Assembly (NCBI GenBank): GCA_000388065.2 | Contig: KB932205.1 | Reading direction: 5' to 3' (one strand) | From: Fonticula alba ATCC 38817 | Taxonomy: Eukaryota > Protista > Nucleariida | DNA length: 64,000 bases | In this document: in pieces, positions 10,191-47,901 of the stretch | How positions within the stretch are numbered: the first letter of the stretch is position 1 | Layout: each line of letters opens with the position of its first letter | Notes under the pieces: model-generated | What the model saw: only the letters and a program-made list of their open reading frames with translations | Told to the model about the DNA's origin: nothing | Database searches by the model: none | Translations under genes and position numbers: made by a program

Positions 10191-11582
10191 CTAGCGCCGC
10201 TGGGTGGAGAACTTCGAACGCGTCATTCCGCCAGTCGGGCGGGTGGAGATTCGCGGCCAGCCGGCGGCCGTGCTGTCGGCCCTGCTGGCCGAGCAGGCGG
10301 ATCTCGATGACGAGGCCCTCTTCCTGGAGCGGCAGCGCGCTCTCGAGGCCGGAGACTTCTCGCTGGAAGACAACCATCATCATGACCATGAGCAGTCGCC
10401 GGCCAGCCCGTACCATGACCATCCCTTTGGGGAGGATCTTTTGTTCAAATCGCGCGTCGGCCACCTGCCGGTGCGCGTGCTGGGCTTTGGCCCGGCGGCC
10501 CTGGCCTCCGAGGTGCCGTCCGATGCTCCCGGCCCGGAGGACATCTATGAGCTCCTGCTCCATGCCGAGCGCACTCTCCACAGCAGGCGCCCGGACAAGG
10601 ACCAGCCGCTGGCCGAATTGGTGACCCTGGCCCGGTGGCCGGACGCCGACCGAGCGGGCTTCATCTATGCAGCGACCTTTGCCCCGGAGGGATCCCCGAT
10701 CGAGGTGGCCGCCGGGCTGCCCTTCTACTACCCCCGGGCCCTGGCCTTCCGGCTGCTGTTCGCCCGATCAACCGGCAGCATGGCAGCCGCTCTGGCCATG
10801 CAGCCCGAGGACATGCAAACCGGGCCCGGCGGCCCCGGCAGGCCTCTCGAGGGGCGCGCCGGGCCACCCCCGCTGCCCGAGCATCCCGGCCCCTGGATTG
10901 CCCTGCAGTATGCTCCCCTGCCTGTGGGATCCGACCTGGGGCCCCGGGCCCCGGCGCACAATGCCCGTGCCTGGCAGCACATCCTGAAAAAGGCGCGGGC
11001 CTGGTGCGTCAATGCCCAGGTCGGATACCGGGGCCTGCGCAGCGAGCGCCTGCTCAGCTCGCTGGAGTACTCGGGCTTCGAGGCGCCGCTCGGCGGGACC
11101 CGGCCCCGGTCGACCGGCGTCACGCCGGCGTCCGAGCTCCGGTGGACTTCCGGTCGCACCCCGCGCCTCGATCGCGAGTGGCTGTATGTCGCGCTGAAGG
11201 AGCGCCTCGGGGCCCGGTGGCTGACCACCTGGTCGGAGTTCGAAACCACCGACCCGGAGAAGAATGTCCACGAGGACTTGGCCATTGCGGCCTACCTGAC
11301 GGCCCTGTGGCGTGCACATGGGTACTTCGGCCGGCCGGGGTCCCTGTGCGCGGCTCCCGAGGGCGACCGCGAGCCCGCCGCCCGGAGGCGATTGTACTTC
11401 GTGGATCTCGGCTGTGGGAATGGCTTCCTCACGTATGTCCTGCGGCAGGCCGGCTTCGAGGGGCATGGTGTGGACCTGGCCCGGCGGCGGATCTGGTCGG
11501 CCCTGTCGCCGGAGGCCGATCTTCGTGAGGGTGCGTGTCCAGCAGCGGCGCGGCCAGCCGGCGGGAGCGAGAGATAGAGAAG

Positions 11583-16692: not shown

Positions 16693-19110
16693 CGCCTGGC
16701 GTACCGGCCGGTGACCACCAAGCGAGGCCATGTGCAACGCCGTCTGACCATCGTCCGTTTGGGCATTGAGATCGGCCCCAGCATCATAGAGCTGCAGGTG
16801 CAGATGCACACCGCGCAGGAGGGGGGGGGGGGGGATCACGCGTCAGCACTGGGACACCAGCGAATGGCGCCCGAGCTTTTCACCAAAACCCGACCCAAGC
16901 AAGGGGAAACACATACCAAGATGATGGCCGAGATGTGGCCGCGCAGGGCGGCCGCGTGAACCGGCGTCCAGCCAGCCGCATCGCGCGCATTCACATCGGC
17001 GCCCTGACCGAGCAGCGTGCTCGCAGCCAGCAATTGCCGGTGATAAGCCGCCAGGTGAAGCTGGGTCCGGCCGTCGGCGTCTCGCGATTGCGGGGTCGCC
17101 CGATCCAGCATCACCGGGCTCTCAGGCCAGGGGGCCACCCCGGGCAGGTACCGCGCCAGAGCGGCCGCCTCACGGCCAAGGTCAAGCCCGGAGCGACGCG
17201 GGAGGCCGGAGGTGCTCGAACGGCGAGCCGGTCGCCCAGGCGTGCCGACCCCCGGCACGGGGGAGCCCCGTCGAATCAGACCTTCGCCGCTCGCCGGGCC
17301 GGAGGCACCTCGGCTGTACGCCTTGCTCAGCTCGCGTGCCTGCTGCTGGTCGAGGGTGATGGACAACCGGCGGAGCCGCTGGTTGGCTGGCTCCGGCGAG
17401 GACCCCTCGTCATCTGATCGGAGGAGATCCTCGTCCTCTTCTTCTTCTCCCCCCTTCGCGCCATCCTTGCCGGTCTCGGCCCGGTCCGGGGCTGCCAGAG
17501 AGGCTGGCGACAACGACGATGCCATGCTCGAGACAGCCGGCGAGCCGGCCGAGGCAACTCCAGCTGCCGCGGTGACAATTGCCCCGGCGGCCCCGGGCTC
17601 CGGAGCGCCGGCCGCCGTCGAGCTGACGGTCGCCACGCCACTGCCCCTGTCAGCATGCTCAGCCGTGGCTTCCTCCTTCTCGGATGCAGACTCCGAGCCC
17701 GAGTTATAGGCGCTCAGGGAGCTCAAGCCGCTGATGTCCGACTCGCTGAGGCTGCTCTCGGTCAGGGAGCTGAGCGAGGAGAAGTCCGACACCAGTGCCA
17801 GGTGGTCGTCGAGCTTGGCCATGGCGCTGGGCACCTCGCTCTCCGAAGAGAAAAGAGCCCGCGGAGAGGGAGGGCCGGCGGGCCGGTGCTTGGCCCGGAG
17901 AAGCGGAGTTGACCGGCGGGCTGGCAGCCGGCTGGGCGACCGCGTGTCCGAATCCGAAGAGCTGGACATGTGGGTGGGTCGGGTGCGCGGCGCCGGCCGG
18001 GCCGGCTGGCCGGGCCGGCTTCGCGCCGGCGAGCCATCCCGTCGACCGGCCATCGACGCCGCCGAGGAGGAGTCCGACGCGTCCGAAGAGTCCGAGCTGA
18101 ACCCACTTCGACTGCTGTCGCTATCGACTGACATGGACATGCGCTGCACCTGCGGCGGGGAGGGAGGCGCAGTCGGCGGAACATCCGGCACCGCCGCACC
18201 CGGATCTGCCACCCGGCGAAGACGCCCAAGGGACGATGCCTGGGGCGGGGGCTGGTCGGCCTTGAGCTCGGTGGACTCATGGTCGCTGTCATCATCGGCA
18301 TCGCTGCCGGAGAAGGCCGGCCCGCGGCCAGCACTGCCACCACCAGGAGCAGCAGCTGCGGGGGTGTCCGGAGCCGGCTTGTTGTGCGGCGGGCCAGAGG
18401 CGTCCATCGAGTCGGGTGAGCGCGACCGCGATCGCGACCGCAGACGCCGAGGCTGGTCCACTGCCATGTCGACGGGTGCCTCATCCGCAGCAGCAACAGG
18501 AGCAGGAGCACCGGCAACGGTGGCGGTGGCGGTGGCGGAGGCAGCAGTGACAACGGCGGCCGGGGGCATGGCCGTAGTCAGAGCCGGCGACGAAGGGGAT
18601 AGCGCCAGCTTGGCCGCCTCGGCAGCCGGCGCCGGGTGCCGGATGGCACCATCAGGCACCGGCGCAGCAGGGTTACCGGAAGGGGGATCCACCTCACTGG
18701 ACAAGCGCAAGGTGGCCAGCTTGGCCGGATCCGTGGCCAGGGGGGCCGAGCGATCGGGCGAGCTGCTGGCCGGGGTGGCAGCCGCCGGGCCGGAAGTCAG
18801 GCTGGGCACTGCTGCCACGGCCGAGGGATCCGCCTGCAGGGAGAGGCCCTCTGACCCGTGGCCCGGGCCTCGGCTCTGATCGCGGGCCCGGCCTGGGCTC
18901 CGGCTTTGAGACCGGCCCCGACTGGGGCTGAGATTCGGCCCGCCACGCGCCCGGACCATACTCGGGCTGTGACTGCGGCTGTGGCTGCGACTGCGACTCC
19001 GAACAGGGCTCCGGCTCCGGCTACGGCTCCGGCTCCGGCTCCGGCTCCGGCCAGGGCTCCGACCAAGGCTACGGCTGCGACTACGGCTGCGGTCACGCCC
19101 GTGGCCAAGA

Positions 19111-19143
<33 letters not shown>

Positions 19144-19162
19144 ATGAGACGGCCGCGCCCAG

Positions 19163-19201
<39 letters not shown>

Positions 19202-19467
19202 TTCGACTCCGGTGGCGATCCAGGGCCGGCCGATCGAAGGGACCAAGTCGGCCCATGTACATTGGCGATCGCCCAGGCCCGGGCCAGCGGCCTGAGGCAT
19301 ATGGCGAGCGCGACCGAGGCGATGGGGCCGGTCGCCGGGGCGAAGAGTAATACCGCCGGCGAGAGGGAGAGTGGCCCCGAGACCGACCAGCGCCAGATGG
19401 CCCAGGCCGATCGTAGCCACCAGCCCCGGCACCGCCGGCACCGCCGCCGCCGCCGCCACGGCCTCGA

Positions 19468-19498
<31 letters not shown>

Positions 19499-19658
19499 TG
19501 ACGCTGCGATTCCGGCTCCGGCTGAAGCTCCGGCTTCGACTGCGCAAGCGACCCAGGCTCCGGCTCCGGCTGCGACTCCGGCTGAAGCTACGGCTGCGGC
19601 TGCGGCCACGGTCGGCCAGGCGGCCGCGCATGCGATTCCGATCGCGCCGAGGGCTGAA

Positions 19659-19696
<38 letters not shown>

Positions 19697-21655
19697 TGAA
19701 GCCCCGGCCGCCGCGGCTGACACTATCACTGCGACTCCGATGGGGCGGTGAGGCGGACCGGCTCCGGCCGCGACCACGACCCCCTCGGCCAGTGGCGAGT
19801 CGCCGCGGAATGCGCCCATGGTGACTGGGACTCCGGCTGCGACTCCGGCTGCGACTGTCGCTGCGGCTGCGGCTTCGGCTGCGGTGTGAGAGGAGCGGGC
19901 GCCGGCCGCGGCCGCGACTCCGGCTGCGAGACCGGCTGCGAGACCGGCTGTGCGAGCGGCTCCGGCTGCGGTCATCGCGCCCGCCAGCGGCCGGCGTGCG
20001 CATGGAGGATGCGCCCGATCGCCCGGCGGGGCCGCGCCGCACCGGCATGGCATAAGATCCACCATCGAGCGCCTGCGTGGAGCCTGGTGAACGGCTTCGA
20101 GCGCGTCTGGACGCCACGCCCAGGGGAGGCAAGAGCAGGAAGGGAGAGAGAGAGAGAGGGAGGGAGAGAGAAAGCGCGAGCGAAGGGTGAGAGAGGTGGT
20201 CGTGAGGAGATGCGGACGCAAAGGCATGCATACCAGCGGAGGTCCATCCGCGCTGTGACTGGGAATGAGGGGAAAGGGGGGGGGGGGAGGGGGGGGCGGA
20301 CGCACGACAGGGACTGCTCCTCAGACTCGGCGGATGGCCGGCCCGGGAGCGGGCTCAGATCCCGGCGTCCGGGGACATCTGGCTCCGAGGTAGAAGGCCG
20401 GCGCCCGAGCGATGGGCCGCCCCCGGGGGAGAAGGGACCTGGCCGAGATGCATGATGATCCATATCCGCCTCATTGGTGCCCATCGATAGGGAGGGCCGT
20501 CTTCCGGGCCCGGAGCGGTCTTCCGGGCTTCGGCTGCGACCGGTGCCCATGCTGGATCGGCCGCCGCCACCGCTGCCAGCGCCACCGAGGGACCCGGGCG
20601 CGCCCAGCGACGCAAGAGGCGGCGATCCCCCAGGCGGAGGATGTCCCAGGGCCAATGGCGTGCCGAGAGGCGACATCGGCGCGCCGAAGGGCGGCACCGC
20701 CTGCCCGGCGCCGGTGGGAGGGCCGCCCGAGGGCCGACGCCCAGCCAGCAGAGTCCCCGGAACCGGACCCGGACCCGGCCCGGGCAGCCCGGTGGAATGC
20801 ATCCGAGGCGATAGTGGCCGATCGAAGGAAGGCCGGCGGCCCGGAGAGAGAACACCCTCACCGCCCATGGAGAAGGAGTTCGACCGGCCCCGCGAGCCCC
20901 CTGCCAGGTGAGAAGCATGCCGGTGAGAAGGGACCACGAGCAGGCGCAATCCGAGGGAGCAATCGAGGACACATACCTAGGCCGGGCGGTGGCGAGAGCG
21001 GCGAGGAGGAGCCGGCACCGGTGGCGGAGGGCCCCGCGCCACTGAGGGACAGTGTCGGCCCGCCGAGGGGCGGCGGTGGCGACGGCGGCGGCGGGGACGA
21101 CACATGAAGGCCGTGCAGCTGGTTGCCGGACAGAACGGGGCCTCCGGCTGTCCCGGGTGGCGGGAAGTGCACCATGCCCGAGCGGAAGCCCCCGGCCGCG
21201 GAGCCGTGCGCGCTCGGCGCCCGGTGGCCGAGGTGCATGAGTGGCGGGGCCGGGGAAGAGCCCGGCCCGCCGGGGCCCGAGCCAGGGGCAGGTGGCCCCG
21301 ATGGCGGCGGTTGGTGCATCATCGGTCGCGACGAGTGAGGGTGGGCATGGGGGGCCCCCACCATCATGCCTGACATGTAGGCACCAGGTGGTGGTCCGCC
21401 AGGCGGGGCCCCCGGCGACATGGGCATCATGGGATGCACCATGCCGGGCAAGTGAGGCGGCGGGCCGCCAGGAGCCCCAGGCGGGCCGTGGCCCCGAGAC
21501 AGGGGCAGGTGCCCCATGATGGATGACCCGCCGGAGGGGGGGGGACCTCCGGAGGGAGGCCCGCCACCGGTGCCGCTGCCTCCTCCACTGCCGCTGCCAG
21601 TCCCAGAGGACGCCCCGCCACCACCGCCAACCATCTTGCCCTGCTGGGGGAGCAT
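15315..21655 (-). CDS. Large protein: Pro/Gly/Met-rich N-terminus, long RS domain, ankyrin repeats
   Basis: Phase-consistent exons 21655-20977, 20900-20306, 20106-16917, 16791-16705, 16506-16404, 16306-16098, 15807-15315. Ankyrin units: DGRTQLHLAA, AGWTPVHAAALRGH, DGQTALHMASLGGH, SGRTPLFEAILGDH, RVAPLHEAAERGQ, RQQTPLDL. RS dipeptide runs at about 18870-19990. Confidence 0.85.
15840..15978. repeat. Intronic (TG)n/(TGCGTG)n microsatellite, unbroken purine-pyrimidine alternation
   Basis: Read directly; lies in intron 16097-15808 of the ankyrin gene. Confidence 0.95.
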
Positions 21656-29623: not shown

Positions 29624-30789
29624 CTAGTTGAGGTCGTAATACTCGCAAGTGACCGGGTTGTACATCTGCTCGCGCGTCGGGTCGTAGTAGTGCTGCAGGG
29701 CCGACACGTAGTATGTCCCGGAGTCGGTGTCGTAATCGTCGCCGGTGACTTCGTAGTCGCGACCGCGGATGGTGATGGTGTACACCTCGCCGGCGATGGA
29801 CACCACGCGGGGGGCAATCCTGGCCGTGCGCGCGCGATACTCCACCCCGGTGGGCTCCTTGTCCAACGGGCTCAGGGCCACGGATGGCAGATCCGGCGAC
29901 ATGCCGGCCGCCGAGGACTGCGGAGTGGCGGCGGCCGTGCTCGGCGCGGAGGTCTGGCTCCGGCGGCTGCTGCTGCCGGCGGCCGACTCCCGGTCAGCAG
30001 TGGCCTTGGCGGCGCCGCTACGCAGGGCCGGCCGGCCGCCTGGAGGGGTCCACGCCTCGCCACGGAAGGCCGAATAGAAGTAGATTACCGAAGCCGAGAG
30101 CATGAAGAGGGCCCCGGCAAAGGTGGGGGCCAGGGCAAAGCCAGGGGCGGCGAACCTGTGGCCGAGGCACACACCCCGGGAGCGAGGCATGTGAGTGGCG
30201 GCCTGCGAGGCGGAGGGCGGAACACCCCCGGGGGAATGGGCACAGGAGGAAACAGGCCAGAGTGGAGGAGGAGGAGGAGGAACGCACAGGAAGTAGATGG
30301 CTGCCCGGACGAAGAGGTTGTGCGAGAAGAAGCCGAGGTGTTGCACTCCAGGGAAGGGGTACTCCAGAAGGGCGGTGAAGACACCGGCCGCGCTGATGAA
30401 CACAAGGAAGAGGTCAGTGGGGGGATGAACAAAAAAAAGGGGAGACCGCAGACCGGTGCCACGCCATCAGGTCCGCACATGCAGAATGCGGCGATCTGCC
30501 AGAGAGGATAGAACATGCCGAAGATGCCATTGGCCATGTAGACTGCGGCCGGAGCATCCAAAGCCACCGGTACACATGCATGGCGCTCGGGGGGGGGGGG
30601 GGGGTTGAGGCAGTCCGAGAGCAAGGGGGAGGGCGAGCATTGTCAGCCTCTGGCACGGAGGATGGCGAGATCTGGCGCTTGGGCGGGGAAACTCCCCCCG
30701 GCAAGGGGGAGGTGGGTCGTACAGCCAGCAGCGCCGAGGCCGGCATAGCGGCCCCAGACGTGAAAGAAGATCCGCCGCACCTGGGACAT
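29624..30789 (-). CDS. CYBA: p22phox (cytochrome b-245 light chain, NADPH oxidase partner) with a Tyr/Asp-rich C-terminal module
   Basis: Exons 30789-30723, 30542-30479, 30392-30288, 30155-29624, all phase-consistent. Spliced protein MSQVRRIFFHVWGRYAGLGAAGFYMANGIFGMFYPLWQIAAFCIAAGVFTALLEYP...FFSHNLFVRAAIYFLLFAAPGFALAPTFAGALFMLSASVIYFYSAFRGEAWTP aligns with recalled human p22phox motifs GAYSIVAGVFVCLLEYP, FTRNYYVRAVLHLL and IYLLAAVRGEQWTP. Confidence 0.9.
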
Positions 30790-33048: not shown

Positions 33049-33121
33049 GGGGGCGTAGCTCAAATGGTAGAGCGGCCGCTTAGCATGCGGCAGGCAGGGG
33101 GATCGATACCCTCCGCCTCCA
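33049..33121 (+). tRNA. tRNA-Ala (anticodon AGC)
   Basis: 73-nt cloverleaf: acceptor GGGGGCG/CGCCTCC with the G3:U70 Ala identity pair, D-arm GCTC/GAGC, anticodon stem GCCGC/GCGGC with loop TTAGCAT, T-arm GGGGG-ATCGATA-CCCTC, discriminator A, downstream T5 Pol III terminator. Confidence 0.97.
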
Positions 33122-36138: not shown

Positions 36139-36550
36139 GAGGAAGCGAAAAAGGGGCACCCCCAAGCGGCGATCGCACTTGGTTGAGGGGTAGATGCAAG
36201 ATGACGTGATCATGTGACGCCGGCGCACCCGCGCCAGAAGGCGGCCAAACACACCGGCCCCGGTGTTGTGCGCACGAACGCGCGCGCGCGCGCGTGAGAA
36301 CGTGCGTAACCACGACGCCCTGGGCGCTTGCGGTCAAAGGCCTGTGTGGCCCTCTCTCTCTGGGGCCGCCCCGCCCCGTGCGCCAGGCCCCCCCTCCTCC
36401 CCCTCTTCCGGCAACGCGCGCTGTGCGCCGCCCCCGCGCGCCCCCACCAGCCGAGACAATTCCCCCCTGGCCCCTTCCGCACGCTACCAGAGAGAATATG
36501 AGAGAGAGAGAGTGCTGTATGACAAGAGGAGGGAGAGGGAAGTTTGAAAC

Positions 36551-36556
36551 TTTATT
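36551..36556 (-). terminator. AATAAA polyadenylation signal of the snoRNA host transcript
   Basis: About 110 nt into the last exon, followed on the minus strand by a U/C-rich stretch. Confidence 0.55.
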
Positions 36557-36783
36557 GTTTGATTTGCTCGCCGCCCGGCCGGCCCCCACAGCAGGCACCG
36601 ACGACGCAGCAGTGTGCGCACACACGCCGTCGATATGTCGCGACAAGGCCACCATGCTCCGCTCTACAAGGAGGAGGGGGGTGAGAGAAGAAGGCGATGA
36701 GTGCGTGTGTTAGAGAGCAATGGGAGGGGGTGTGTGTGCAGGAGAGAGAGAGAGGGGGGGTGTTTTACTCAACAAGAAAAGTG

Positions 36784-36852
36784 ATCATCAGGCGGCCCTT
36801 TTGGGGACGGCTGTAGGTATTAGCATGAAAATTTTTGGCAATCATCGTAATC
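36784..36852 (-). ncRNA. snR53: Box C/D snoRNA snR53-like (SSU Am796, yeast numbering)
   Basis: C box CGATGAT (36847-36841), guide TTTCATGCTAATA (36830-36818) antisense to SSU TATTAGCATGGAA, D box CTGA (36791-36788), terminal stem GATTA/TGATC. The D' box is degenerate (CCTA). Confidence 0.65.
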
Positions 36853-37465
36853 GACACGCGTATTGCGCGCGCGCGCGCCGGGGAGAGGAGGGGGAAGCGG
36901 TGTGACCGCAGGGAGGGGGATATACGTACGTATTTGGTGGGAAGGGGGACATGCCCGAGAGATGTGGAGAACACACACGGGCTGCCGAGTGCACGGGATG
37001 CGCGCGATGTGTACCACCGCAGACACAGCGCGAGAAGTGCGCGGCCAGGAGTGGGGGGCTGTGTGTGGGGGGGAGATAGGAAGAGAGAAGGAAACACGGA
37101 TGTAAGAATGTGTATGGAAAGAGGATGGTTTCTATTTGGGGGATATATATGTGGGAGAAGCGCCAAAGACACACACACGCAGGAAGGTCCGGGAGGGAGC
37201 AGGCAGAAGTGCCCCCTCTCTCAGATGCCTCCCCACAGGGAAAGTGTGTGCAAAGGTGCAACAGAGGAAGAGAGAGAGAGGCTTGGGCGCACATGAACCA
37301 TGCACAGACACCGCGCTCCCCCGTGAGAGGGTGGGGAAGGGGGCCGAGCGACCCGGCGCATTCTCAACAAGGAGGGATGTTTGGCTAAGAGGGGGAGAGA
37401 GAAAGAGGGTGTCAGAGGAAGGATGTGGCGCGGGGTGGAGGGCGGGCGTGGAATAAAAAGGAAGA

Positions 37466-37532
37466 GAACTCAGGCATCAGAATGTGGACATCATGCTTCA
37501 GACGAAAGATGGTTTTGATGAACATCAGAGTG
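37466..37532 (-). ncRNA. SNORD51: Box C/D snoRNA U51/U32/snR39-like (LSU Am807, yeast numbering)
   Basis: C box CTGATGT (37528-37522), guide ACCATCTTTCG (37513-37503) + T-CTGA, antisense to LSU CGAAAGATGGT. C' ATGATGT, D box CTGA (37473-37470), terminal stem ACTC/GAGT. Confidence 0.8.
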
Positions 37533-37745
37533 GATGTGGGGAGGAGAGAGGATAGAGGGAGAGACGGGCATGGACCCAGGGGGGTTGTGTATGTACCTTG
37601 TCGTGCGTGTGACCGACACATGGGGAGGGTCGGAACACGGAGAAAGGGAGGGCGCACACATCCACAGGAGGTGTGTCTACAGAGGAGGGAGGAGAGTGTG
37701 AGAAGAGAGTGGCGGAGGAGGAGGGAAGATGCGCAGAGGGCAATC

Positions 37746-37823
37746 TAACTCTGAATTGAACAGTCGTCACTGAACATCTGACGGCCTTTCCTATCATTAT
37801 TTGTTGCGGTTCTCATCATAGCA
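37746..37823 (-). ncRNA. SNORD49: Box C/D snoRNA U49-like (LSU Cm in CGG[C]TCTTCC)
   Basis: C box ATGATGA (37819-37813). ATAGGAAAGGCCGT-CAGA closely matches recalled human U49 ATAGGAAGTGCCGT-CAGA and is antisense to LSU CGGCTCTTCCTATCATT. C' GTGACGA. The terminal D box appears as CAGA (37753-37750). Confidence 0.75.
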
Positions 37824-37941
37824 CTATAGGGGGGAGGAGAGGGGAAGGAGGAGAGGGGAGACGTCTGTGGGAGGGGGGAGAGAGGGAGGAGTTAGGAATG
37901 GGGAGGGAGGAGGGGGATGAGGCGGGAGAGAAAACGCGTGT

Positions 37942-38020
37942 TTTCTCAGTGCGTATCGCGAAATACAAAACCGTTCGAATCATCAGATTCATACAGCCAA
38001 GGGTGAATTTCATCAAGGAA
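37942..38020 (-). ncRNA. SNORD53: Box C/D snoRNA U53-like (LSU Cm in ACAG[C]CAAGGG)
   Basis: C box TTGATGA (38016-38010), guide CCCTTGGCTGT (38003-37993) + D' ATGA, internal C' CTGATGA, D box CTGA (37949-37946). The +5 rule selects the C equivalent to human 28S C3848 (older numbering). Confidence 0.75.
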
Positions 38021-38225
38021 GGACACGGGAGGCGGAGAGAGGGCGGGCAGCCGCGGACGTACACTGTGTGTGTGGGGAGGGACACCACAGAACAAGGGCC
38101 ATGGAGGAGAGAGGCACATGCATCTCCACCCCTCGGGTGGATGAGCGACAGGGCCACTGAGAAGAGGAAGAGAATGTTAGAAGAGAGGCGGAAGGGAGGA
38201 GAGGGAGGAAGATGGGCTGATGGAG

Positions 38226-38319
38226 GGGATCAGACATCTAAGGAAGGTCCATATATTCCGTCATCTACCTAAGGTATAAGGTGGAAACTGCGAACATGGC
38301 TGGTTTTTCATCACGAATA
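38226..38319 (-). ncRNA. U14: U14 box C/D snoRNA
   Basis: C box GTGATGA (38314-38308), domain A TTCGCAGTTTCCAC, domain B CCTTCCTTAGATGT directly before D box CTGA (38233-38230). Both hallmark 18S-complementary elements of U14/snR128 are present. Confidence 0.95.
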
Positions 38320-38574
38320 GGGGGGAGGAGGGGAGGAGGAGGGGGGCGGGGCGGGTATGCGTACACTCTTCGCCAAGTAGGATGGCTGGCCCTGGGGGAG
38401 GGCGGCGGCGGCTCGAGGTGGGGGCCAAGAGCCAGGGAAAGTGACCGGCAACAGCTTCGGAGGTAGGGGCGTGCGCGCGTGCTCTCACATGCAGAAGGGC
38501 GGCCTACGATGGGAGGAGGGGAGGCGATGTCAGAAAGGGAGTGGCGAGGAGCGGGGGAGATGGGAGGGGGAAGG

Positions 38575-38660
38575 GCGTTCAGGTAAACCCGTTTGGCTGT
38601 GGGCACTGCATTTATCAGCAGAGTCTCGTATGACTGGGGCGGCAGGGTCTCATCAGGACA
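38575..38660 (-). ncRNA. SNORD31: Box C/D snoRNA U31/snR67-like (LSU P-loop Gm, E. coli G2251 equivalent)
   Basis: C box CTGATGA (38656-38650), D box CTGA (38582-38579). A 14-nt guide TGCCGCCCCAGTCA (38644-38631) is complementary to the conserved LSU segment TGACTGGGGCGGCA. Confidence 0.8.
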
Positions 38661-38917
38661 AGGGAGGGGGGAGGGGGAAGGAGGCGTACTCTGACTGTGT
38701 GAGGAGGGGGGAAGCTCGCGTCGCAGGCGCAGACATACTCCAAGATGCCCGGTCCCCAGAGGGAAGGGGGCTCTCTCTCATGGATCTCCAACACTATGGG
38801 ACTGCTTGGGGAGGGGGCTATCGAGAGGAGAGGGGGAAGGGGGGGGGCGAGAGGAGTTAGAAGGAGGGAGACATGTGGAGGGGAGGAGGGAGGAGAGGAG
38901 GGGGGGGGGATGACAGA

Positions 38918-39032
38918 CGCCGAGTGATCAGCTAAAGCTGGCTTGCGCCGTAGGGGGATACCCAACGACGGGCAAAATTTCTTCAACACGGTCGTTTTGA
39001 CGGGATAAGAAGACAAGGCATCATTTCGGCGC
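38918..39032 (-). ncRNA. snR190: Box C/D snoRNA, snR190/SNORD12-like
   Basis: C box ATGATGC (39024-39018), D box CTGA (38931-38928), terminal stem CGCCGA/TCGGCG. Guide GTCTTCTTATCCCGT + D' CAAA is antisense to LSU rRNA GCGGGGAAAGAAGAC. The following ACGACC-GTGTTGA resembles the recalled snR190 TTCGACC-ATGACGA. Confidence 0.75.
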
Positions 39033-39469
39033 GCGTCTGCGGAGGGGCAATGGCAGGAGAATGGAGGGGGGGGGGAGAACGCGCGGGGGGGGAAGCGGGT
39101 AACGAACCAGACACAGTGGGGGGGAAAGGGGGCACAGAGAGAGCGCGAGTGAAGGAGTGGGCGGCGTGGGATCCTCCGACAGCACGAGACACGCAAGCAC
39201 AAGAGCCGGCCACCAAGAAGGAGCACATCCACACAGTGCCAAGGTCTCCTTCCGGTGGTAAGCGGGCACACGCGCAGCAGCAGCAGCGAGCATGCACACA
39301 AACACACAGGCAAAGGCACAGAGAGAGGAGAGGCAAGACACGGGGGGGGGTGGGAGCACAAGGTGGGGCACAGCGCACGCGATGCAAGGCTGAAAGAGGG
39401 CCGCCTCACTCCACACAGAGTGAGGCTGTGACCCTCTTCGCTTCGTCTTCAGTGGCCGCCCGGCGGCCC

Positions 39470-39477
39470 CTTATATA
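39470..39477 (-). promoter_or_regulatory. TATA box of the snoRNA host transcript
   Basis: TATATAAG on the minus strand in otherwise GC-rich DNA, about 90 nt upstream of the first splice donor. Confidence 0.6.
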
Positions 39478-42477
39478 GTAGGCCATTTTCCCCCTCGACG
39501 CTCCCCCGCCCCCCTCCGTCCCGCCCCCCCCAGGGCGCGGGGGGGCCTGTGGCAAGACGTCCCCGGGGCGGGGCTGGCCGGGCAACGATTCGAGCAGCAC
39601 CGGAGAGGAAGGCCACCAGAGCCAGGCTGGGGCGGGGCGCGAAGGGGGGGGGGGGGGCCGACCATGCAGCCGCCCCGTGCCCGGCCTCCAGGGGACTCAC
39701 TCCCCCATGCCGGGACACACGGCGCCCATGCGACACGGTCGCCGAGGACCAGGCCGCCGGGCACGACTGGCGCCGGAGCCACCACCAAGAGCTGGCGGGC
39801 CCCAGGAGTCGCCCCCCCCCCCCCGCCCTGGTCGGCAAATGACCCGACCGCCGGGGTAGGGCAGCGGAGTGCGCTGATCCGCGAGTGCTCGCCCCTTCCC
39901 GTCCCAAGGCCCGCACCCAAGCGGGGCACGGCAGACGGAGCAAGCCGGCTGGCGAACCGGGAGGGGCGCGTCACACACGCACCCCCCCGGCTGCCCTCCT
40001 CCCCGGCCCCCGGGCGGAGACAAAAACCGAACCCACGTTGGGCGCCAAAAAAGAGCGGCGCCGAGCGACAAGCCCGCCTCTTCCCTCGTGGCATAAAAGG
40101 GGGAGGGGGAAAGCCCGGTGGACCGGGGATGCCTCTCGCGCTGGGCGTGCGTCCTCCCCCGTTCTCGCTGGTCCCCGCCCCCCCCCCCATGGCCACTCGG
40201 AACAGCGGGCCCCTTTGTCGAAGGCAAGGAGCACAGCGCCAAACCCCGCAGCACGACCGGTCCGCACGAAGGTGCTGGAAAGAGACGGCCGCCTGGTGCC
40301 TTCGCCCGGTGTCTGGTCTCCCTTTTCTCCGCCGCCTACGGCCCCCCCTCGGTCCTAATGTGCACTCTCCGAGGAGGCAGGAAACAAGGGACCGCCCGGC
40401 CCCGGCCTCCAGCGGGCGACCGCGCGGACAGCCGGGTGGGAGGATTTCTATATAATGCCATTGTGGTTCCATGATGGACTAAGTGGCATTGTTGAGGGTG
40501 CACATGATTCCGTCGGGGACTTGGAATCTCAATTCAAAGGGGGCGTGTTTTAAGAGCGTTCGGGACGGAGATGATCACATTGGCCTCTCCTGCCGGCGCC
40601 CGTTCTGAATCAACCTCACTCGTTGCCGGCCAGTCTAGAGCTTTATTGCTGAATAAAAAGCACCCTTTTTTGTTGCAAACGACCAACAGGCCGTGTGCCC
40701 AACGAGATTGTTGCCGCCATGTTTCGGCCCACCTCCTCTCTCGCTCGGATCGGACCGTCGCCGGCCGAGCGAACGGTCTCCTATTGGGTTGGTGTATTCT
40801 CTTCGGCACAGACCGCCCCACGAAAGCAGGGCGCCCGGGTCTGTGGGATGCCCCACCCCGGGCGGGGGGGGGGGGGGGACTTGACAGTGCCCGAGGGCTG
40901 CCGCGGCCTGCCTCCCTGGGCGTCGGCGAGTCGGCCCGAATGCCGGCGGACGGGGTGGAAAAACTCAGGATGGCCTCCCCACTGCGGGGGGCGCCCCCGC
41001 GCGCCGCGAGAGTCGCGCCAGCACCAGACCTGGAAATGCGAGGGGGAGGGGAGGCTGAACGTCGCGCGAGCCCCTGTTGGATGTACCCCCAGGCTCTTTT
41101 TTGCAGTACCGAAGACCAGGCACGCGCGGGAGCGGCGAGGGGCGAAGGTACCGTCCAGTGTCCTCTCCCCCCGCCCCCCGTGGGCACATGAAGCCCTGCG
41201 CCGCCGGGCTGGTGGCCATGCGCCAGGGGGCTGCTTGTGTGTGCCTATGCCCGGGGGCGGTGCAGTGCAGTGTGCGTCCGGGTCCCTGGTCCCTTTTGCC
41301 AGGGGCCTGGGCAAGCAGTCCCCCCGCCCCCCCCCCCGGGAGTCCGTGCCTAACTGGGGGGGGGGGGAGAGACGTGTTGCCCGGGGGCGGGGGCTGGTGG
41401 CAGGCAGGCGGGTGTGGACGGATGGCCGGCAAGGGGGGGGGACGCCCGCTTCCGCCGATCCGCCCCCCCCCCTCCCTGCATATCTCCTCGGACACCGCCC
41501 TCCCTCCCTGAGTGGTGGGAGGTCGGCGGATGGCGTGCACAAACGGGCGGGGATTTTTCAGCCGGACTATTGCCCGGCGCACTCCGGAAAGGGTTCGTCC
41601 TCGCCAGCCCGACCCGTTTTCCATTTGTTATCCCTAACTTTTGAGGTAAAGGTCGTAAGGTCCGTATTTATCCCTTCCCCCTTTCCCCCTCCTCCTTTCC
41701 TCCCTCTCCTCCCCCCCCCCTCTCGTGTGCGTGTACACGTCCACATCCGCGGATGGTCCTGCCGTCGTCGGGCGTAGATGCTGTGTGGCCGGCCGGCCCG
41801 CCCCTCTCCCCCCTCCCTCCCCGTGAGCGCGTATCCACACCCGCCTGCGTGTGCGGTTGGGCCGATCTGCGCGCGTTTCTCGCCCCCCCCTCCTCCGTCG
41901 CCCTCGGGGGCTGTCGTGTCTCCCCTTCTCCTCTCTCCCTCGCTCGCCCCGTGGCTGTCACTTCGACGTGAGGAGATGGGGGGACACCTGGATGCGCCGC
42001 GCCCATACTCGCTCGCTCTCGTGCGCGCGGGCATGTGTGTCTGCATGGGGGGGGAGGCCTGGATTGTCTCGCCTCCGACTGCGCGGCAGCAGGAGGGCCC
42101 CCCGCCCCGCGCCCGGCACATGGCCAAGTGCCCTCCCTGCCTTGTGCCTGGTCGCGCAAGGGCGGGGGGGGAGAACCGTGTGCTGTGTCCACCCACGACG
42201 ATCCGCCTCCATCGTGTGGACGGCATCGGATGTACCACCACGGATGCTGCATCCGATGTTCCCCCCCTGATGAGCGAGCGTCGTGTCGCCTGTGGGAGGG
42301 CCATGCTCTCTCTCCCTCCCTCCCTCATCCTTTCCTCCTCTGGAGCCCAAGCGTAACCTCCCCCCCTCGTGCCGAGACTGACTCTCCCTCTCCCCCTCGC
42401 TGCGCGCCCGCCCCCTTCACCGCCGCCCCCCTCCCGCCCGTTCGTTTATCCCCCTCTCCTCCTCTCGCACAGCAAAA

Positions 42478-45003: not shown

Positions 45004-46252
45004 ATGTTCCTCTCCCGGTCCCTGGTCCGGGCTGGCGCGTCCCTCCGCAACACCACCTCCCTCGTATGTGTTCCCTGCGTGGCCCTTTTGCCGTTCCCCT
45101 GGTCCTCTGTCTCGCCCCCCTCCCTCGCCGGCTAACACTGCTCGCGCTCGCGCTCGCGCTGGCCGCTCTTCGCAGATTTCCGTGCGTGCGTTCACCCAGA
45201 GCGTTCCCCGGCGCAACGAGGACAGCCCCTTCTCGTCGGCCGGCGTCCCGCAGGAGACCGCTGCCCGTAGCCCGGTCGTTGACACCGGTGTTTTCAATGA
45301 GGTGAACCTCCAGATCGAGGACTTCCCCGGCATTGCCCAGGGGGCCTTCGACCCGTCTATCACCGCCAAGCTCCTGGCCCCCCTGGACCCCGATGAGATT
45401 GAGATCAAGCCCGGTACGTGCACGAACGCGCGCGCGCGCGCACACACACACACACACATGCATGGTTTGCAAATGTGCATATACACGCCGCCTGCCTGGT
45501 GTCTCTCTCCCTCTCTCTCTCTCTGACAAGAGCCCCCTCCCGACAGACGGCCTGATCTATCTGCCTGAGATCAAGTACCGCCGCATCCTGAACGCCTCCC
45601 TCGGCCCCGGCGGCTGGGGTATGGTCCCCCGCAGCCCGCACACCTTCCAGGACCGGATCCTCTCGCGCGAGTATGCCCTCTTCGCCATGGGTCGCTTCGT
45701 GGGCCAGGCACGCGGCGAGCAGGTGTGTTGCCTCGTCCTCCTCTCTCTCTCCCCCCCCCCCCGTCCGACTTGCCCTTGCTCACTCTCGTTCTCCCGTCGC
45801 GCCTCTTCCCATGGCAGATTGTCTTCGACCGCCATGGCTTCCCCACCGCCTCCGAGGGTGTCAAGTCCAACGCCCTGGTGCGCTGCTGCAAGGATCTCGG
45901 CATTGCCAGCGAGCTCTGGGACCCGCGCTTCATCCTCGAGTGGAAGCAGAAGTATGCCGTCGAGCGCTGGTGCGTGTTTCCTCGTCTCTGCCCGCCTCCT
46001 CCCCGCGCATCCCCTCGCCGGCATTCCGCCACCTACTCACGCTTCTCCGCGCCCCCGCCGGACTGCCGGCAACACAGGGTCACCGACACCCGCACCAACA
46101 AGAAGTCCAAGGCCTGGCGCCGCAACGACCGCGTCTTCGACGCCCCTCTCGTCGAGTCGACCTTCTCCTCCAGCGCGGCTGGCGGTGCCAAGCCCGGGGT
46201 CCCCGGTGCTGGCGGTGCGCCCCCCGGCGCCGGTGCCCCCCAGACTCGCACC
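45004..46252 (+). CDS. MGM101: Mitochondrial genome maintenance protein Mgm101 (Rad52-like); 3' end in a gap
   Basis: Exons 45004-45063, 45176-45413, 45547-45722, 45818-45969, 46078->46252. Motifs [62 protein letters not shown]. Mitochondrial presequence. Confidence 0.96.
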
Positions 46253-47901
46253 NNNNNNNNNNNNNNNNNNNNNNNNNNNNNNNNNNNNNNNNNNNNNNNN
46301 NNNNNNNNNNNNNNNNNNNNNNNNNNNNNNNNNNNNNNNNNNNNNNNNNNNNNNNNNNNNNNNNNNNNNNNNNNNNNNNNNNNNNNNNNNNNNNNNNNNN
46401 NNNNNNNNNNNNNNNNNNNNNNNNNNNNNNNNNNNNNNNNNNNNNNNNNNNNNNNNNNNNNNNNNNNNNNNNNNNNNNNNNNNNNNNNNNNNNNNNNNNN
46501 NNNNNNNNNNNNNNNNNNNNNNNNNNNNNNNNNNNNNNNNNNNNNNNNNNNNNNNNNNNNNNNNNNNNNNNNNNNNNNNNNNNNNNNNNNNNNNNNNNNN
46601 NNNNNNNNNNNNNNNNNNNNNNNNNNNNNNNNNNNNNNNNNNNNNNNNNNNNNNNNNNNNNNNNNNNNNNNNNNNNNNNNNNNNNNNNNNNNNNNNNNNN
46701 NNNNNNNNNNNNNNNNNNNNNNNNNNNNNNNNNNNNNNNNNNNTCCTGCTCACCCGGCGCTGCGTCTTCCGTGCTGGGGGGGGGACGCGGGTAGTATGCT
46801 GGCCTGTGTGCATGCGGGGCCCGGCTCGCCCCCCTCCACTCCGCCTGAATATGGTTCGGCGGGACAATGAAGGGGGGTGCCGGGCAGCCCGCCGGTGCCT
46901 CTGCCCTCTCTGGCTCGTGGCCGGGGCGGAAGGCCTTGTCGGTGCGATGGTAGTTGACTAAAGATCCGTCGGCACTTGTCCGTGGCCAGGCGGGTCGTCC
47001 AGTATTCTGCCGACCGCCGGCCCTTTAATATTCGACCCGGTATATTTGCTCCAAAGGGACACCTCCTCGGCGGCTGGCGGGGCGACTTTCGGGGGCTGGT
47101 CCCTTTGTGTGCCTGACGTATGTGTTTCCCGAGGCAGACCGGGGGCGGGGCGGGGCCGTCGTGGGCGGAGATAGGCAGGGAGTCGCAGCCCCCCCCCCCC
47201 GCCCCTGTCCGGGGAGGGTGCTGGCGCGCGCGCGCATATTTGCACCGCCAGGTGGCCAGCATTCTTCCGAGAATTGTCACCCTGTCCGCTGGGGCTCCAT
47301 GCATATGCGCGCGCGGCCCTTGTGCATGCGTCTGTGGGCCGGTCTGTTTACACACATTCGGCGTCCGATCTTGATGTGCGCTCGGCCTCCCCCCNNNNNN
47401 NNNNNNNNNNNNNNNNNNNNNNNNNNNNNNNNNNNNNNNNNNNNNNNNNNNNNNNNNNNNNNNNNNNNNNNNNNNNNNNNNNNNNNNNNNNNNNNNNNNN
47501 NNNNNNNNNNNNNNNNNNNNNNNNNNNNNNNNNNNNNNNNNNNNNNNNNNNNNNNNNNNNNNNNNNNNNNNNNNNNNNNNNNNNNNNNNNNNNNNNNNNN
47601 NNNNNNNNNNNNNNNNNNNNNNNNNNNNNNNNNNNNNNNNNNNNNNNNNNNNNNNNNNNNNNNNNNNNNNNNNNNNNNNNNNNNNNNNNNNNNNNNNNNN
47701 NNNNNNNNNNNNNNNNNNNNNNNNNNNNNNNNNNNNNNNNNNNNNNNNNNNNNNNNNNNNNNNNNNNNNNNNNNNNNNNNNNNNNNNNNNNNNNNNNNNN
47801 NNNNNNNNNNNNNNNNNNNNNNNNNNNNNNNNNNNNNNNNNNNNNNNNNNNNNNNNNNNNNNNNNNNNNNNNNNNNNNNCCCCCCCCGCGCGCGCGCGCA
47901 G

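What the first reader, a model, noticed from the sequence alone, without database searches (positions are those of the whole stretch)
36535..39480. Hidden non-coding host gene carrying seven intronic box C/D snoRNAs
Seen: about 3 kb with no real ORF, but a minus-strand TATA box, an AATAAA, and eight introns with the same donor, branch and acceptor grammar as the neighbouring protein genes. Seven introns each hold one C...D unit about 40-85 nt downstream of a donor (further in intron 1), each with a guide antisense to a conserved rRNA segment. Known: one-snoRNA-per-intron non-coding hosts (GAS5/UHG type) are best described in animals and also occur in some fungi. Inference: this is such a host in a unicellular opisthokont. 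Protein-centred annotation would miss it, so it may be undescribed for this lineage.
Basis: partly seen in the sequence, partly recalled or inferred. Interest (0 to 1): 0.92.

Follow-up and report, generated by a model that had tools for sequence, protein, structure and literature searches.

The report
Non-coding snoRNA host gene, Fonticula alba
This stretch is a spliced, apparently non-coding gene of the amoeba Fonticula alba whose introns carry seven small RNAs predicted to guide ribosomal RNA methylation; this gene layout is already known in fungi and animals, and here the public annotation calls it an orphan protein.

Summary
RNA contigs from four public runs show one minus-strand transcript of about 1.05 kb (36535-39371) with eight exons and seven GT..AG junctions. 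It starts about 100 nt below one of only three minus-strand TATA motifs in the window and ends 15-20 nt after an AATAAA.

The introns hold seven box C/D units. Rfam places them, all below its curated cut-offs, with SNORD12/snR190, SNORD31/snR67, U14, SNORD53/92, SNORD49 and the SNORD32/51 type. The seventh matches snR53 (N. crassa CD11) by both guides.

Each D box lies 49-71 nt upstream of a branch-like A. Two units share intron 4, which looks built for nested two-step splicing. Intron 6 holds no snoRNA.

The organism is Fonticula alba, and the locus is annotated as "hypothetical protein H696_03348". Every protein model there ends inside a retained or partly spliced intron. The fully spliced RNA has no in-frame stop, the frame shows no codon periodicity, and no homologue exists among 1.84 billion representative proteins.

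Such hosts, the snR190-U14 linkage and nested splicing in them are already published for fungi. This is a new member of a known kind, in the sister lineage of fungi. Other first-reader notes of this scan flag this same stretch and similar hosts elsewhere in the genome.

The parts
39471..39477 (-). TATA box (TATATAA), about 100 nt upstream of the first base of the RNA contig
   Evidence: one of 3 TATA[AT]A[AT] motifs on the minus strand of the 64-kb window; the contig 5' end is at 39371. The true start site was not mapped.
36535..39371 (-). Host transcription unit as covered by RNA contigs (about 1053 nt after splicing). Exons: 39371-39108, 38817-38690, 38503-38365, 38156-38065, 37676-37597, 37384-37293, 37058-36930, 36663-36535.
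   Evidence: pieces table, contigs of 1051 and 1054 nt in X3 and X4. (GT..AG ends, donor consensus GTACG).
38917..39033 (-). Unit 1 in intron 1 (39107-38818), SNORD12/SNORD106/snR190-type C/D snoRNA. C box ATGATGC at 39024-39018, D box CTGA at 38931-38928, terminal stem of about 7 bp.
   Evidence: RF00581, 35.5 bits, E 7.8e-5 (below the gathering score of 43); the fold closes the terminal stem. PMC2780460 equates snR190 with HBII-99.
38576..38660 (-). Unit 2 in intron 2 (38689-38504), SNORD31/snR67-type. C box CTGATGA at 38656-38650, D' guide GCCGCCCCAGT followed by a degenerate D' (CATA), D box CTGA at 38582-38579.
   Evidence: weak hits to SNORD31 (E 0.6), plant U31b, Giardia GlsR4 and Tetrahymena TtnuCD11, all sharing this guide; a 13-14 bp duplex with LSU ACTGGGGCGGC. 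PMC5824354: the snR67 D' target is 25S-2619.
38228..38319 (-). Unit 3 in intron 3 (38364-38157), U14. C box GTGATGA at 38314-38308, domain A TTCGCAGTTTCCACC, domain B CCTTCCTTAGATGT directly before D box CTGA at 38233-38230.
   Evidence: RF00016, 33.3 bits, E 3.1e-4 (gathering 64); domain B forms 14 Watson-Crick pairs with SSU ACATCTAAGGAAGG in 20 eukaryotic SSU sequences; domain A matches 11.
37944..38020 (-). Unit 4 in intron 4 (first half), SNORD53/92-type guide. C box TTGATGA at 38016-38010, D' guide CCCTTGGCTGT before ATGA at 37992-37989, C' CTGATGA, D box CTGA at 37949-37946.
   Evidence: sR48 E 0.028; SNORD53_SNORD92 aligns the same guide directly before its box; 11 bp with LSU ACAGCCAAGGG in 5 panel loci.
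37748..37823 (-). Unit 5 in intron 4 (second half), SNORD49-type. C box ATGATGA at 37819-37813, D' guide ATGATAGGAAAGGCCGT before CAGA at 37780-37777, C' GTGACGA, D-like CAGA at 37753-37750.
   Evidence: RF00277, 28.3 bits, E 8.7e-4 (gathering 37); duplex with LSU CGGCTCTTCCTATCAT at -23 kcal/mol against a shuffled mean of -16.
37468..37530 (-). Unit 6 in intron 5 (37596-37385), SNORD32/51 / snR39/59-type. C box CTGATGT at 37528-37522, D' guide ACCATCTTTCGT before CTGA at 37501-37498, C' ATGATGT, D box CTGA at 37473-37470.
   Evidence: ceN109 E 0.0055, snoMe28S-Am982, TtnuCD1, all with the same guide and box; 11 Watson-Crick pairs with LSU CGAAAGATGGT in 41 panel loci.
36765..36851 (-). Unit 7 in intron 7 (36929-36664), snR53 / N. 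crassa CD11-type. C-like ACGATGA at 36848-36842, D' guide TTTCATGCTAAT, C' CTGATGA at 36791-36785, D guide GATCACTTTTCTTG before TTGA at 36772-36769, and a 4-bp stem TTAC/GTAA flanking the boxes.
   Evidence: No Rfam hit; a 12-bp duplex with SSU ATTAGCATGGAA in 10-11 loci; that site lies 380-383 nt after the U14 site, that is, at yeast 18S-796 / N. crassa 793; the D guide pairs with LSU near position 341-357 of a fungal-like LSU. PMC2780460 lists CD11 targets 18S-Am793 (D') and 26S-Am356 (D).
37865..38064 (-). Nested-splicing module of intron 4. Tandem donors GT|GTACGT at 38064/38062, internal branch-like CTAAC (A at 37892) and internal acceptor AG at 37866-37865, followed by ACGT. After a first splice this ACGT rebuilds the donor GTACGT.
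   Evidence: annotated variants 4/5 (P0003) are reproduced exactly by joining 38063 to 37864; the final junction is 38065|37676; distances and donor consensus.
37059..37292 (-). Intron 6. It holds no snoRNA and is often retained. It contains an imperfect hairpin of about 85 nt (about 37168-37252).
   Evidence: unspliced contig 37115-37322 in X1 and X2 at a depth similar to the spliced one; the main annotated protein P0002 reads into this intron; fold z-score -3.4; no Rfam hit and no H/ACA layout.
36551..36556 (-). AATAAA poly(A) signal, 15-20 nt before the contig 3' ends (36535-36537)

Best explanation
The locus, Fonticula alba gene H696_03348, is a dedicated non-coding snoRNA host gene of the UHG/GAS5 kind. 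RNA polymerase II makes a precursor of about 2.9 kb from a TATA promoter. The spliceosome removes the introns, and seven box C/D snoRNAs are the functional products.

Each snoRNA sits about 50-70 nt upstream of a branch point. In animals this position couples snoRNP assembly to splicing. After debranching, exonucleases would trim each intron down to the snoRNP.

The predicted roles are:
- U14: 18S processing plus the conserved 18S Cm site.
- snR190/SNORD12 type: LSU domain V.
- snR67/SNORD31, SNORD53/92, SNORD49 and snR39/59 (SNORD32/51) types: LSU methylation sites.
- snR53 type: 18S, and possibly LSU and U6.

Intron 4 carries two snoRNAs. It is most simply removed in two nested steps, so that each snoRNA gets its own lariat. 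The spliced, AATAAA-terminated 1.05-kb RNA is a by-product. Its first AUG opens a 69-codon ORF that ends in exon 2, so it is a likely NMD substrate.

Shown here: the splicing, the box and guide anatomy, the family resemblance, and the lack of coding signal. Inferred: the processing route, snoRNP formation, methylation, the order of the nested splices, and NMD.
For: Splicing and transcript ends: seven junctions, contig ends; TATA, AATAAA, GTACG donors.

snoRNA identity: Rfam hits are strand-specific, one per intron, and the only ones in 64 kb; guides directly before D or D' boxes pair with rRNA segments conserved in up to 41 of the eukaryotic rDNA loci fetched; box enrichment P 2.6e-5 and an AT-rich composition island for each unit.

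Coupling to splicing: (D box to branch A distances of 71, 49, 53, 54, 53, 58 and 62 nt).

Non-coding status:
- the first-AUG ORF is 69 aa, and the second AUG opens 303 codons with no stop before the RNA end.
- all three annotated protein models end only inside a retained or partly spliced intron, one at a TGA inside unit 6.
- no codon periodicity, against clear periodicity in Pfam-supported coding segments.
- no Pfam family.
- one hit in 1.84 billion representatives, and it is this gene itself.

Precedent: PMC2780460 (N. crassa UHG-like hosts with ORFs of 159-267 bp, and snR190 plus U14 co-transcribed from introns) and PMC5033589 (nested and recursive splicing in Candida snoRNA hosts).
Against: - No Rfam hit reaches its curated gathering score.
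- Mature snoRNAs were not seen. The RNA contigs give no depth over the units, and no small-RNA data were examined.
- Terminal stems are weak or absent in six of the seven units.
- Units 5 and 7 have non-canonical boxes: CAGA, and ACGATGA/TTGA.
- The D' boxes of units 1, 2, 4 and 7 are degenerate and were placed after seeing the guide.
- Fonticula's own rRNA was not available, so targets rest on other eukaryotes' rRNA.
- A 362-codon stop-free frame is longer than in 995 of 1000 dinucleotide shuffles.
- The poly(A) tail and the start site were not mapped directly.
Confidence: 0.88

Rival explanations
1. H696_03348 is a genuine, lineage-specific protein-coding gene, as annotated, that also happens to host intronic snoRNAs, as ribosomal-protein and other coding hosts do.
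For: A stop-free frame of 303 codons runs from the second AUG through all exon junctions. It is longer than in 995 of 1000 dinucleotide shuffles. The public annotation gives protein models of 270, 221 and 176 aa.
Against: The fully spliced RNA has no in-frame stop before its 3' end. Each annotated model gets its stop only from a retained or partly spliced intron. An upstream out-of-frame AUG opens a 69-codon ORF.

GC1/2/3 is flat (0.63/0.62/0.66), and A at third positions is 0.12, against 0.69/0.54/0.82 and 0.03 in real coding segments.

Stop triplets are scarce in all three frames (2, 3 and 1). About 7% of window tiles are equally poor in them, and the shuffle expectation fails on this low-complexity DNA. 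The open frame is therefore compositional.

There is no Pfam match and no homologue in 1.84 billion representatives.
Confidence: 0.05
2. The snoRNAs are real but are released mainly by endonucleolytic cutting of the precursor (the RNase III / polycistronic route of budding yeast and plants). Splicing of the host would then be incidental rather than the maturation step.
For: In S. cerevisiae, homologues of several of these snoRNAs (snR190-U14, snR67-snR53) mature from polycistronic precursors (PMC5934358, PMC5824354). Two units share intron 4 in the mature-RNA junction map.
Against: Every unit lies inside an efficiently removed intron. Every D box lies 49-71 nt from a branch-like A, a spacing with no role in an endonucleolytic route. 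The one intron without a snoRNA is the poorly spliced one. Intron 4 has an internal acceptor used in annotated variants, which gives one snoRNA per lariat. No strong stem-loops flank the units.
Confidence: 0.07
3. Intron 4 is removed in a single step from the GTGTAC donor. The transcript that uses the internal acceptor would then be a dead-end alternative isoform, and units 4 and 5 would be separated by another nuclease, or only one of them would mature.
For: The RNA contigs show only the 38065|37676 junction. GTGTAC is a possible donor. The intermediate junction is known only from annotated variants.
Against: The direct donor departs from the locus consensus GTACG. The downstream donor and the donor rebuilt after the first splice both fit it. 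The four bases after the internal AG are exactly those needed to rebuild it; by composition this is roughly a 1-in-500 coincidence (my estimate). Both units keep the 53-54 nt spacing to their own branch sites. The same device is published for Candida snoRNA hosts (PMC5033589).
Confidence: 0.35

Closest known systems
Neurospora crassa snoRNA cluster V and other UHG-like hosts (Liu et al. 2009, PMC2780460)
   Same: A non-coding, multi-intron host with one C/D snoRNA per intron and only short ORFs (159-267 bp there; 210 bp here for the first-AUG ORF). snR190 (CD16) and U14 (CD37) are co-transcribed from introns. The snR53 homologue CD11 has a D' guide to 18S-Am793 and a D guide to 26S-Am356, as predicted here for unit 7. 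Alternative splicing of the host is seen.
   Different: Here one host carries seven snoRNAs and joins members of two clusters that are separate in fungi (snR190-U14 and snR67-snR53), plus SNORD53/92-, SNORD49- and snR39/59-type units. The organism lies outside Fungi proper.
S. cerevisiae dicistronic snR190-U14 and snR67-snR53 units
   Same: The same snoRNA families are physically linked and co-transcribed.
   Different: In yeast they are intron-less polycistrons cut by Rnt1. Here they are intronic, the pairs are interleaved (order: snR190, snR67, U14, ..., snR53), and they lie in one gene.
Mammalian GAS5 / UHG (SNHG1) / ZFAS1 hosts
   Same: A spliced non-coding RNA ending after a poly(A) signal, with C/D snoRNAs about 70-110 nt upstream of 3' splice sites and a short upstream ORF that predicts NMD. 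ZFAS1 hosts the SNORD12 family (from my own knowledge).
   Different: No 5'TOP start could be shown. The snoRNA sets differ, and no sequence homology of exons is expected or testable.
Nested/recursive splicing in Candida snoRNA clusters (PMC5033589) and fungal stwintrons (PMC8469720)
   Same: Removing one snoRNA intron rebuilds the 5' splice site needed for the next one. The internal 'exon' has zero or negative length. In stwintron terms, a donor is split by an internal intron.
   Different: Here the split falls between donor bases 2 and 3. A weaker direct donor (GTGTAC) also exists, so the nested route may not be obligatory. The order of the steps is not shown.

Membership tests
Box C/D snoRNA | C box (RUGAUGA) near the 5' end and D box (CUGA) near the 3' end, 60-130 nt apart, on one strand | tested here: met
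   all seven units have them. Deviations: unit 1 ATGATGC, unit 6 CTGATGT, unit 7 ACGATGA/TTGA, unit 5 D box CAGA; enrichment P 2.6e-5.
Box C/D snoRNA | A guide of at least 10 nt directly upstream of D or D', complementary to rRNA or snRNA, with the target paired to the fifth position | tested here: met
   Units 3 and 6 meet it with canonical CTGA boxes. Units 2, 4, 5 and 7 meet it with degenerate D' boxes, supported by the matching Rfam family alignments. Targets were taken from other eukaryotes' rRNA, not Fonticula's own.
Box C/D snoRNA | Short terminal stem bringing C and D together | tested here: inconclusive
   clear only in unit 1 (about 7 bp). Unit 7 has 4 bp. The other units have none.
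Box C/D snoRNA | Accumulates as a stable small RNA bound by fibrillarin, Nop56, Nop58 and Snu13 | not testable with these tools
   Only contigs of apparently long-RNA libraries were available. They give no depth over the units.
Rfam families SNORD12, SNORD14 (U14), SNORD49 | Score at or above the curated gathering cut-off | tested here: not met
   35.5 against 43, 33.3 against 64, and 28.3 against 37 bits. The E-values (7.8e-5 to 8.7e-4) and the shared guide elements support distant membership.
U14 | Domain A (18S-complementary processing element) and domain B (guide for the conserved 18S Cm site) | tested here: met
   alignment; domain B forms 14 Watson-Crick pairs with 20 SSU sequences. The A in the guide matches the T variant (ACATCTAAGG) carried by many eukaryotes.
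Non-coding snoRNA host gene (UHG/GAS5 type) | Spliced Pol II transcript with snoRNAs in its introns | tested here: met
   Six of the seven mapped introns hold snoRNAs; one holds two, and one holds none.
Non-coding snoRNA host gene (UHG/GAS5 type) | No functional or conserved ORF in the spliced RNA | tested here: met
   Conservation in close relatives could not be tested, because no eukaryote genome collection was at hand.
Non-coding snoRNA host gene (UHG/GAS5 type) | 5'TOP transcription start (vertebrate hosts) | tested here: inconclusive
   The start site was not mapped. A CCCTCTTTC tract lies at 39400-39392, upstream of the contig start.
Non-coding snoRNA host gene (UHG/GAS5 type) | Intronic C/D snoRNA placed about 50 nt upstream of the branch point | tested here: met
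   49-71 nt for all seven units. Branch points were inferred from CTNAC motifs, not mapped.
Nested / recursive splicing (stwintron-like) | The first splice rebuilds a functional splice site used by a second splice, and both the intermediate and the final junction are observed | tested here: inconclusive
   The final junction is in the RNA contigs. The intermediate junction is seen only through annotated variants 4/5. The rebuilt donor GTACGT follows from the sequence. The order of the steps was not tested.

The most novel reading that the evidence does not exclude
The snoRNA linkages known as separate fungal clusters (snR190-U14 and snR67-snR53) were part of one larger intron-based host gene in the common ancestor of Fonticula and Fungi. 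Nested splicing that yields one snoRNA per lariat was already in use there. Fungal clusters and yeast polycistrons would then be fragments of this ancestral host.
Probability: 0.4. Interest if true: 0.45.

Novelty: new member of a known kind. Interest (0 to 1): 0.3.

Why it matters
- It corrects a public annotation. The orphan 'hypothetical protein' H696_03348 with several variants is best read as a non-coding host, and seven snoRNAs are missing from the record.
- No paper in the searched library describes snoRNAs of Fonticula.
- It places the fungal-type organisation one node deeper, at the base of the fungal side of the opisthokonts. That organisation comprises UHG-like hosts, conserved snoRNA linkages and probably nested splicing.
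- It gives concrete sites for RiboMeth-seq in this organism.
- It is not a new kind of system.

Tried and rejected
- Rfam at gathering thresholds found only a tRNA.
- A crude 10-mer antisense scan against fetched rDNA did not discriminate: 17 runs here against 9-25 in control tiles.
- An all-CTGA null showed that duplex length alone is weak evidence (28% of controls reach 11 bp). Only conservation across loci separates guides from chance (2% of controls).
- RNAduplex with shuffles singled out only the unit 5 D' guide and the unit 7 D guide. The D guides of units 1, 2, 4 and 6 have no convincing target in the panel. The unit 1 D guide matches one unrelated rRNA in a variable helix.
- An 11-mer match of unit 5 to SSU (AACCGCAACAA) and a 10-mer match in intron 6 to LSU were judged to be chance.
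- Intron 6 has no H/ACA or C/D layout.
- A simple recursive model with a 2-nt exon 'AC' was rejected, because the contig has no extra letters at the junction.
- GC3 on raw long ORFs was uninformative. It was replaced by Pfam-supported segments.
- Lineage from the protein atlas was uninformative. The look-up of encoding contigs had no record. Pfam on flanking ORFs found nothing. The bacterial promoter scan is irrelevant here.
- The spliced protein could not be searched whole, because it has no reference. Only the exon-1 piece was searched.

Full report
**What is there**

Read on the minus strand, the stretch shows seven AT-richer islands inside very C-rich DNA. Each island has a C-box-like and a D-box-like motif. 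The islands have GC 0.41-0.55, against 0.62 for the rest of the introns, where C alone makes up 0.51. TGATGA occurs six times on the minus strand within the introns against 0.56 expected from the rest of the window (P 2.6e-5).

**Transcript**

Four public RNA runs (two samples, 2012) hold contigs that lie on the stretch only after seven segments are skipped. All seven segments have GT..AG ends on the minus strand. Two contigs of 1051 and 1054 nt span everything. The intron 3 junction was dropped from the joints table by a repeat filter, but it is contiguous in the contig records.

| Exon | Coordinates |
|---|---|
| 1 | 39371-39108 |
| 2 | 38817-38690 |
| 3 | 38503-38365 |
| 4 | 38156-38065 |
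| 5 | 37676-37597 |
| 6 | 37384-37293 |
| 7 | 37058-36930 |
| 8 | 36663-36535 |

The contigs end 15-20 nt after AATAAA (36556-36551). They begin about 100 nt below TATATAA (39477-39471). Each motif is one of only three on that strand in 64 kb. The donors follow GTACG. The acceptors follow a pyrimidine tract with a CTAAC, CTGAC or CTCAC motif 19-47 nt upstream.

**The seven units**

At curated thresholds Rfam reports only a tRNA in the window. With E-values it reports three snoRNA families:
- SNORD12/SNORD106 at 39033-38944 (E 7.8e-5)
- U14 at 38319-38228 (E 3.1e-4)
- SNORD49 at 37823-37748 (E 8.7e-4)

All three are on the minus strand, each in its own intron. In the whole 64 kb at E<=0.1 these are the only hits besides the tRNA.

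Short-range scans give weak hits for three more units, and each hit shares the guide-plus-box element:
- Unit 2 resembles SNORD31, plant U31b, Giardia GlsR4 and Tetrahymena TtnuCD11.
- Unit 4 resembles archaeal sR48 and SNORD53/92.
- Unit 6 resembles ceN109, snoMe28S-Am982 and TtnuCD1.
- Unit 7 has no Rfam hit.

**Guides and targets**

To test the guides I fetched 120 eukaryotic rDNA loci from metagenomes with a 5.8S 17-mer. I oriented their rRNAs using L014, which holds complete SSU, 5.8S and LSU. The guides directly before D or D' boxes pair as follows:

| Unit | Guide | Pairing |
|---|---|---|
| U14 (unit 3) | domain B | 14 Watson-Crick pairs, 20 SSU sequences |
| U14 (unit 3) | domain A | 11 SSU sequences |
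| 6 | D' | 11 pairs with CGAAAGATGGT, 41 loci |
| 7 | D' | 12 pairs with ATTAGCATGGAA, 10-11 loci |
| 4 | D' | 11 pairs with ACAGCCAAGGG, 5 loci |
| 2 | D' | 13-14 pairs with ACTGGGGCGGC |
| 5 | D' | -23 kcal/mol with CGGCTCTTCCTATCAT, against a shuffled mean of -16 |

Among 295 control CTGA sites in the window, only 2% reach 11 bp on a target shared by at least 4 loci.

The unit 7 site lies 380-383 nt after the U14 site in fungal-like SSUs. That places it at yeast 18S-796 / N. crassa 18S-793, the snR53 D' target (PMC5824354, PMC2780460). Its D guide pairs near LSU position 341-357 of a fungal-like LSU. This matches the 26S-Am356 D target listed for the N. crassa snR53 homologue CD11 (PMC2780460). 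The same papers list a U6 target for this D' guide.

PMC5824354 gives 25S-2619 as the snR67 D' target, and PMC2780460 equates snR190 with HBII-99. The human site numbers I attach to SNORD12, SNORD31, SNORD49 and SNORD53/92 come from my own memory and are not verified here. The D guides of units 1, 2, 4 and 6 have no convincing target.

**Geometry**

The D box end lies 71, 49, 53, 54, 53, 58 and 62 nt from the nearest downstream branch-like A. For unit 4 I counted to the internal CTAAC at 37895-37891. The spacing of about 50 nt is the one reported as optimal for splicing-coupled C/D snoRNP assembly in mammals (Hirose and Steitz, from my own knowledge). It resembles what PMC2780460 reports for N. 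crassa and Drosophila. As is usual for C/D snoRNAs, the units themselves are unstructured, and only unit 1 has a clear terminal stem.

**Intron 4**

The mature junction 38065|37676 spans 388 nt and two units. After unit 4 come a branch-like CTAAC, a pyrimidine tract and the AG at 37866-37865.

The public protein variant P0003 is reproduced exactly by joining 38063 to 37864, that is, by using the donor GTACGTCC at 38062 and this internal acceptor. That ligation places the GT of 38064-38063 in front of ACGT and so rebuilds a consensus donor exactly at the final exon 4 boundary. A second splice to 37677 then gives the junction seen in the contigs.

Nested and recursive splicing of this kind is published for Candida snoRNA clusters (PMC5033589), and split donors are known from fungal stwintrons (PMC8469720). 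The order of the steps is my inference. One-step use of the weaker GTGTAC donor is not excluded.

**Coding or not**

The first AUG opens 69 codons that end in exon 2. The second AUG opens 303 codons with no stop before the RNA end.

A search of the exon-1 part of that frame against 1.84 billion representative proteins found one protein, and it is identical to the query. Its cluster holds three Fonticula alba models of gene H696_03348: 'hypothetical protein' and its variants. I rebuilt all three:
- The 270-aa model reads into retained intron 6.
- The 221-aa model reads into retained intron 5 and stops at a TGA inside unit 6.
- The 176-aa model stops in the second half of intron 4.

No model exists for the fully spliced RNA, which has no in-frame stop.

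The frame has GC1/2/3 of 0.63/0.62/0.66 and 12% A at third positions. Pfam-supported coding segments of the same window (AdoMet_MTase, Mgm101, cytochrome b558 alpha, ankyrin) give 0.69/0.54/0.82 and 3%. Pfam finds nothing in the exon translations.

Stop triplets are scarce in all three frames. About 7% of window tiles are equally poor in them, and dinucleotide shuffles misjudge this low-complexity DNA. The long open frame is therefore compositional.

**Comparison and novelty**

[quoted passage not shown] They include a co-transcribed snR190-U14 pair and ORFs of 159-267 bp (PMC2780460). Five such clusters are conserved in fungi (PMC5033589, PMC5824354).

What is new here:
- The lineage. Fonticula alba is a sister group of Fungi, and no paper in the library treats its snoRNAs.
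- Members of two fungal clusters lie interleaved in one host with three further snoRNAs.
- The locus is misannotated as protein-coding.

Other first-reader notes of this scan flag the same stretch (s1-065667, s1-065925) and several similar hosts elsewhere in this genome. I did not check those other loci.

**Limits**

- Read laying could be called only once, so the intermediate junction, the start site and intron 6 retention could not be re-examined.
- Fonticula's own rRNA was not available.
- No small-RNA data were seen.
- No eukaryotic genome collection was available for synteny.

Noticed in passing
window 37059-37292 (minus strand): Intron 6, the only intron without a snoRNA, is covered by an unspliced contig (37115-37322) in runs X1 and X2 at about the depth of the spliced form. 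It holds an imperfect hairpin of about 85 nt built partly from (CA)n/(GT)n arms (z -3.4). The main annotated protein model depends on retention of this intron.
   Followed up: partly
window 38592-38602 (minus strand): The region upstream of the D box of unit 2 contains CACAGCCAAA. This is the same-sense sequence as the LSU segment targeted by unit 4's guide, so units 2 and 4 could pair with each other over about 8 nt. It may be chance.
   Followed up: no
window 39392-39440 (minus strand): An inverted repeat (GAAGAGGG ... CCCTCTTTC) and a pyrimidine tract resembling a 5'TOP lie between the TATA box and the first base of the RNA contig. The start site is not mapped.
   Followed up: no
window 33049-33121 (+): A tRNA gene, the only Rfam hit above its curated threshold in the window (57 bits).
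   Followed up: no
window 10204-11577 (+), 45333-46961 (+), 29624-30403 (-), 16836-20231 (-): ORF pieces with Pfam support: AdoMet_MTase (PF07757), Mgm101p, cytochrome b558 alpha (p22phox, marginal at 26.2 against 25 bits) and ankyrin repeats. They were used only as coding controls.
   Followed up: partly
L037 (metagenome contig Ga0182739_1001515): A eukaryotic rDNA unit fetched as a reference carries five group I introns, three in SSU and two in LSU.
   Followed up: no
window 36535-39371, exons: Stop triplets are rare on the sense strand of the exons in all three frames: 5 in 1053 nt, none in exon 1 (264 nt). This is at about the 5th-7th percentile of window tiles. I read it as compositional, but no cause was established.
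   Followed up: partly
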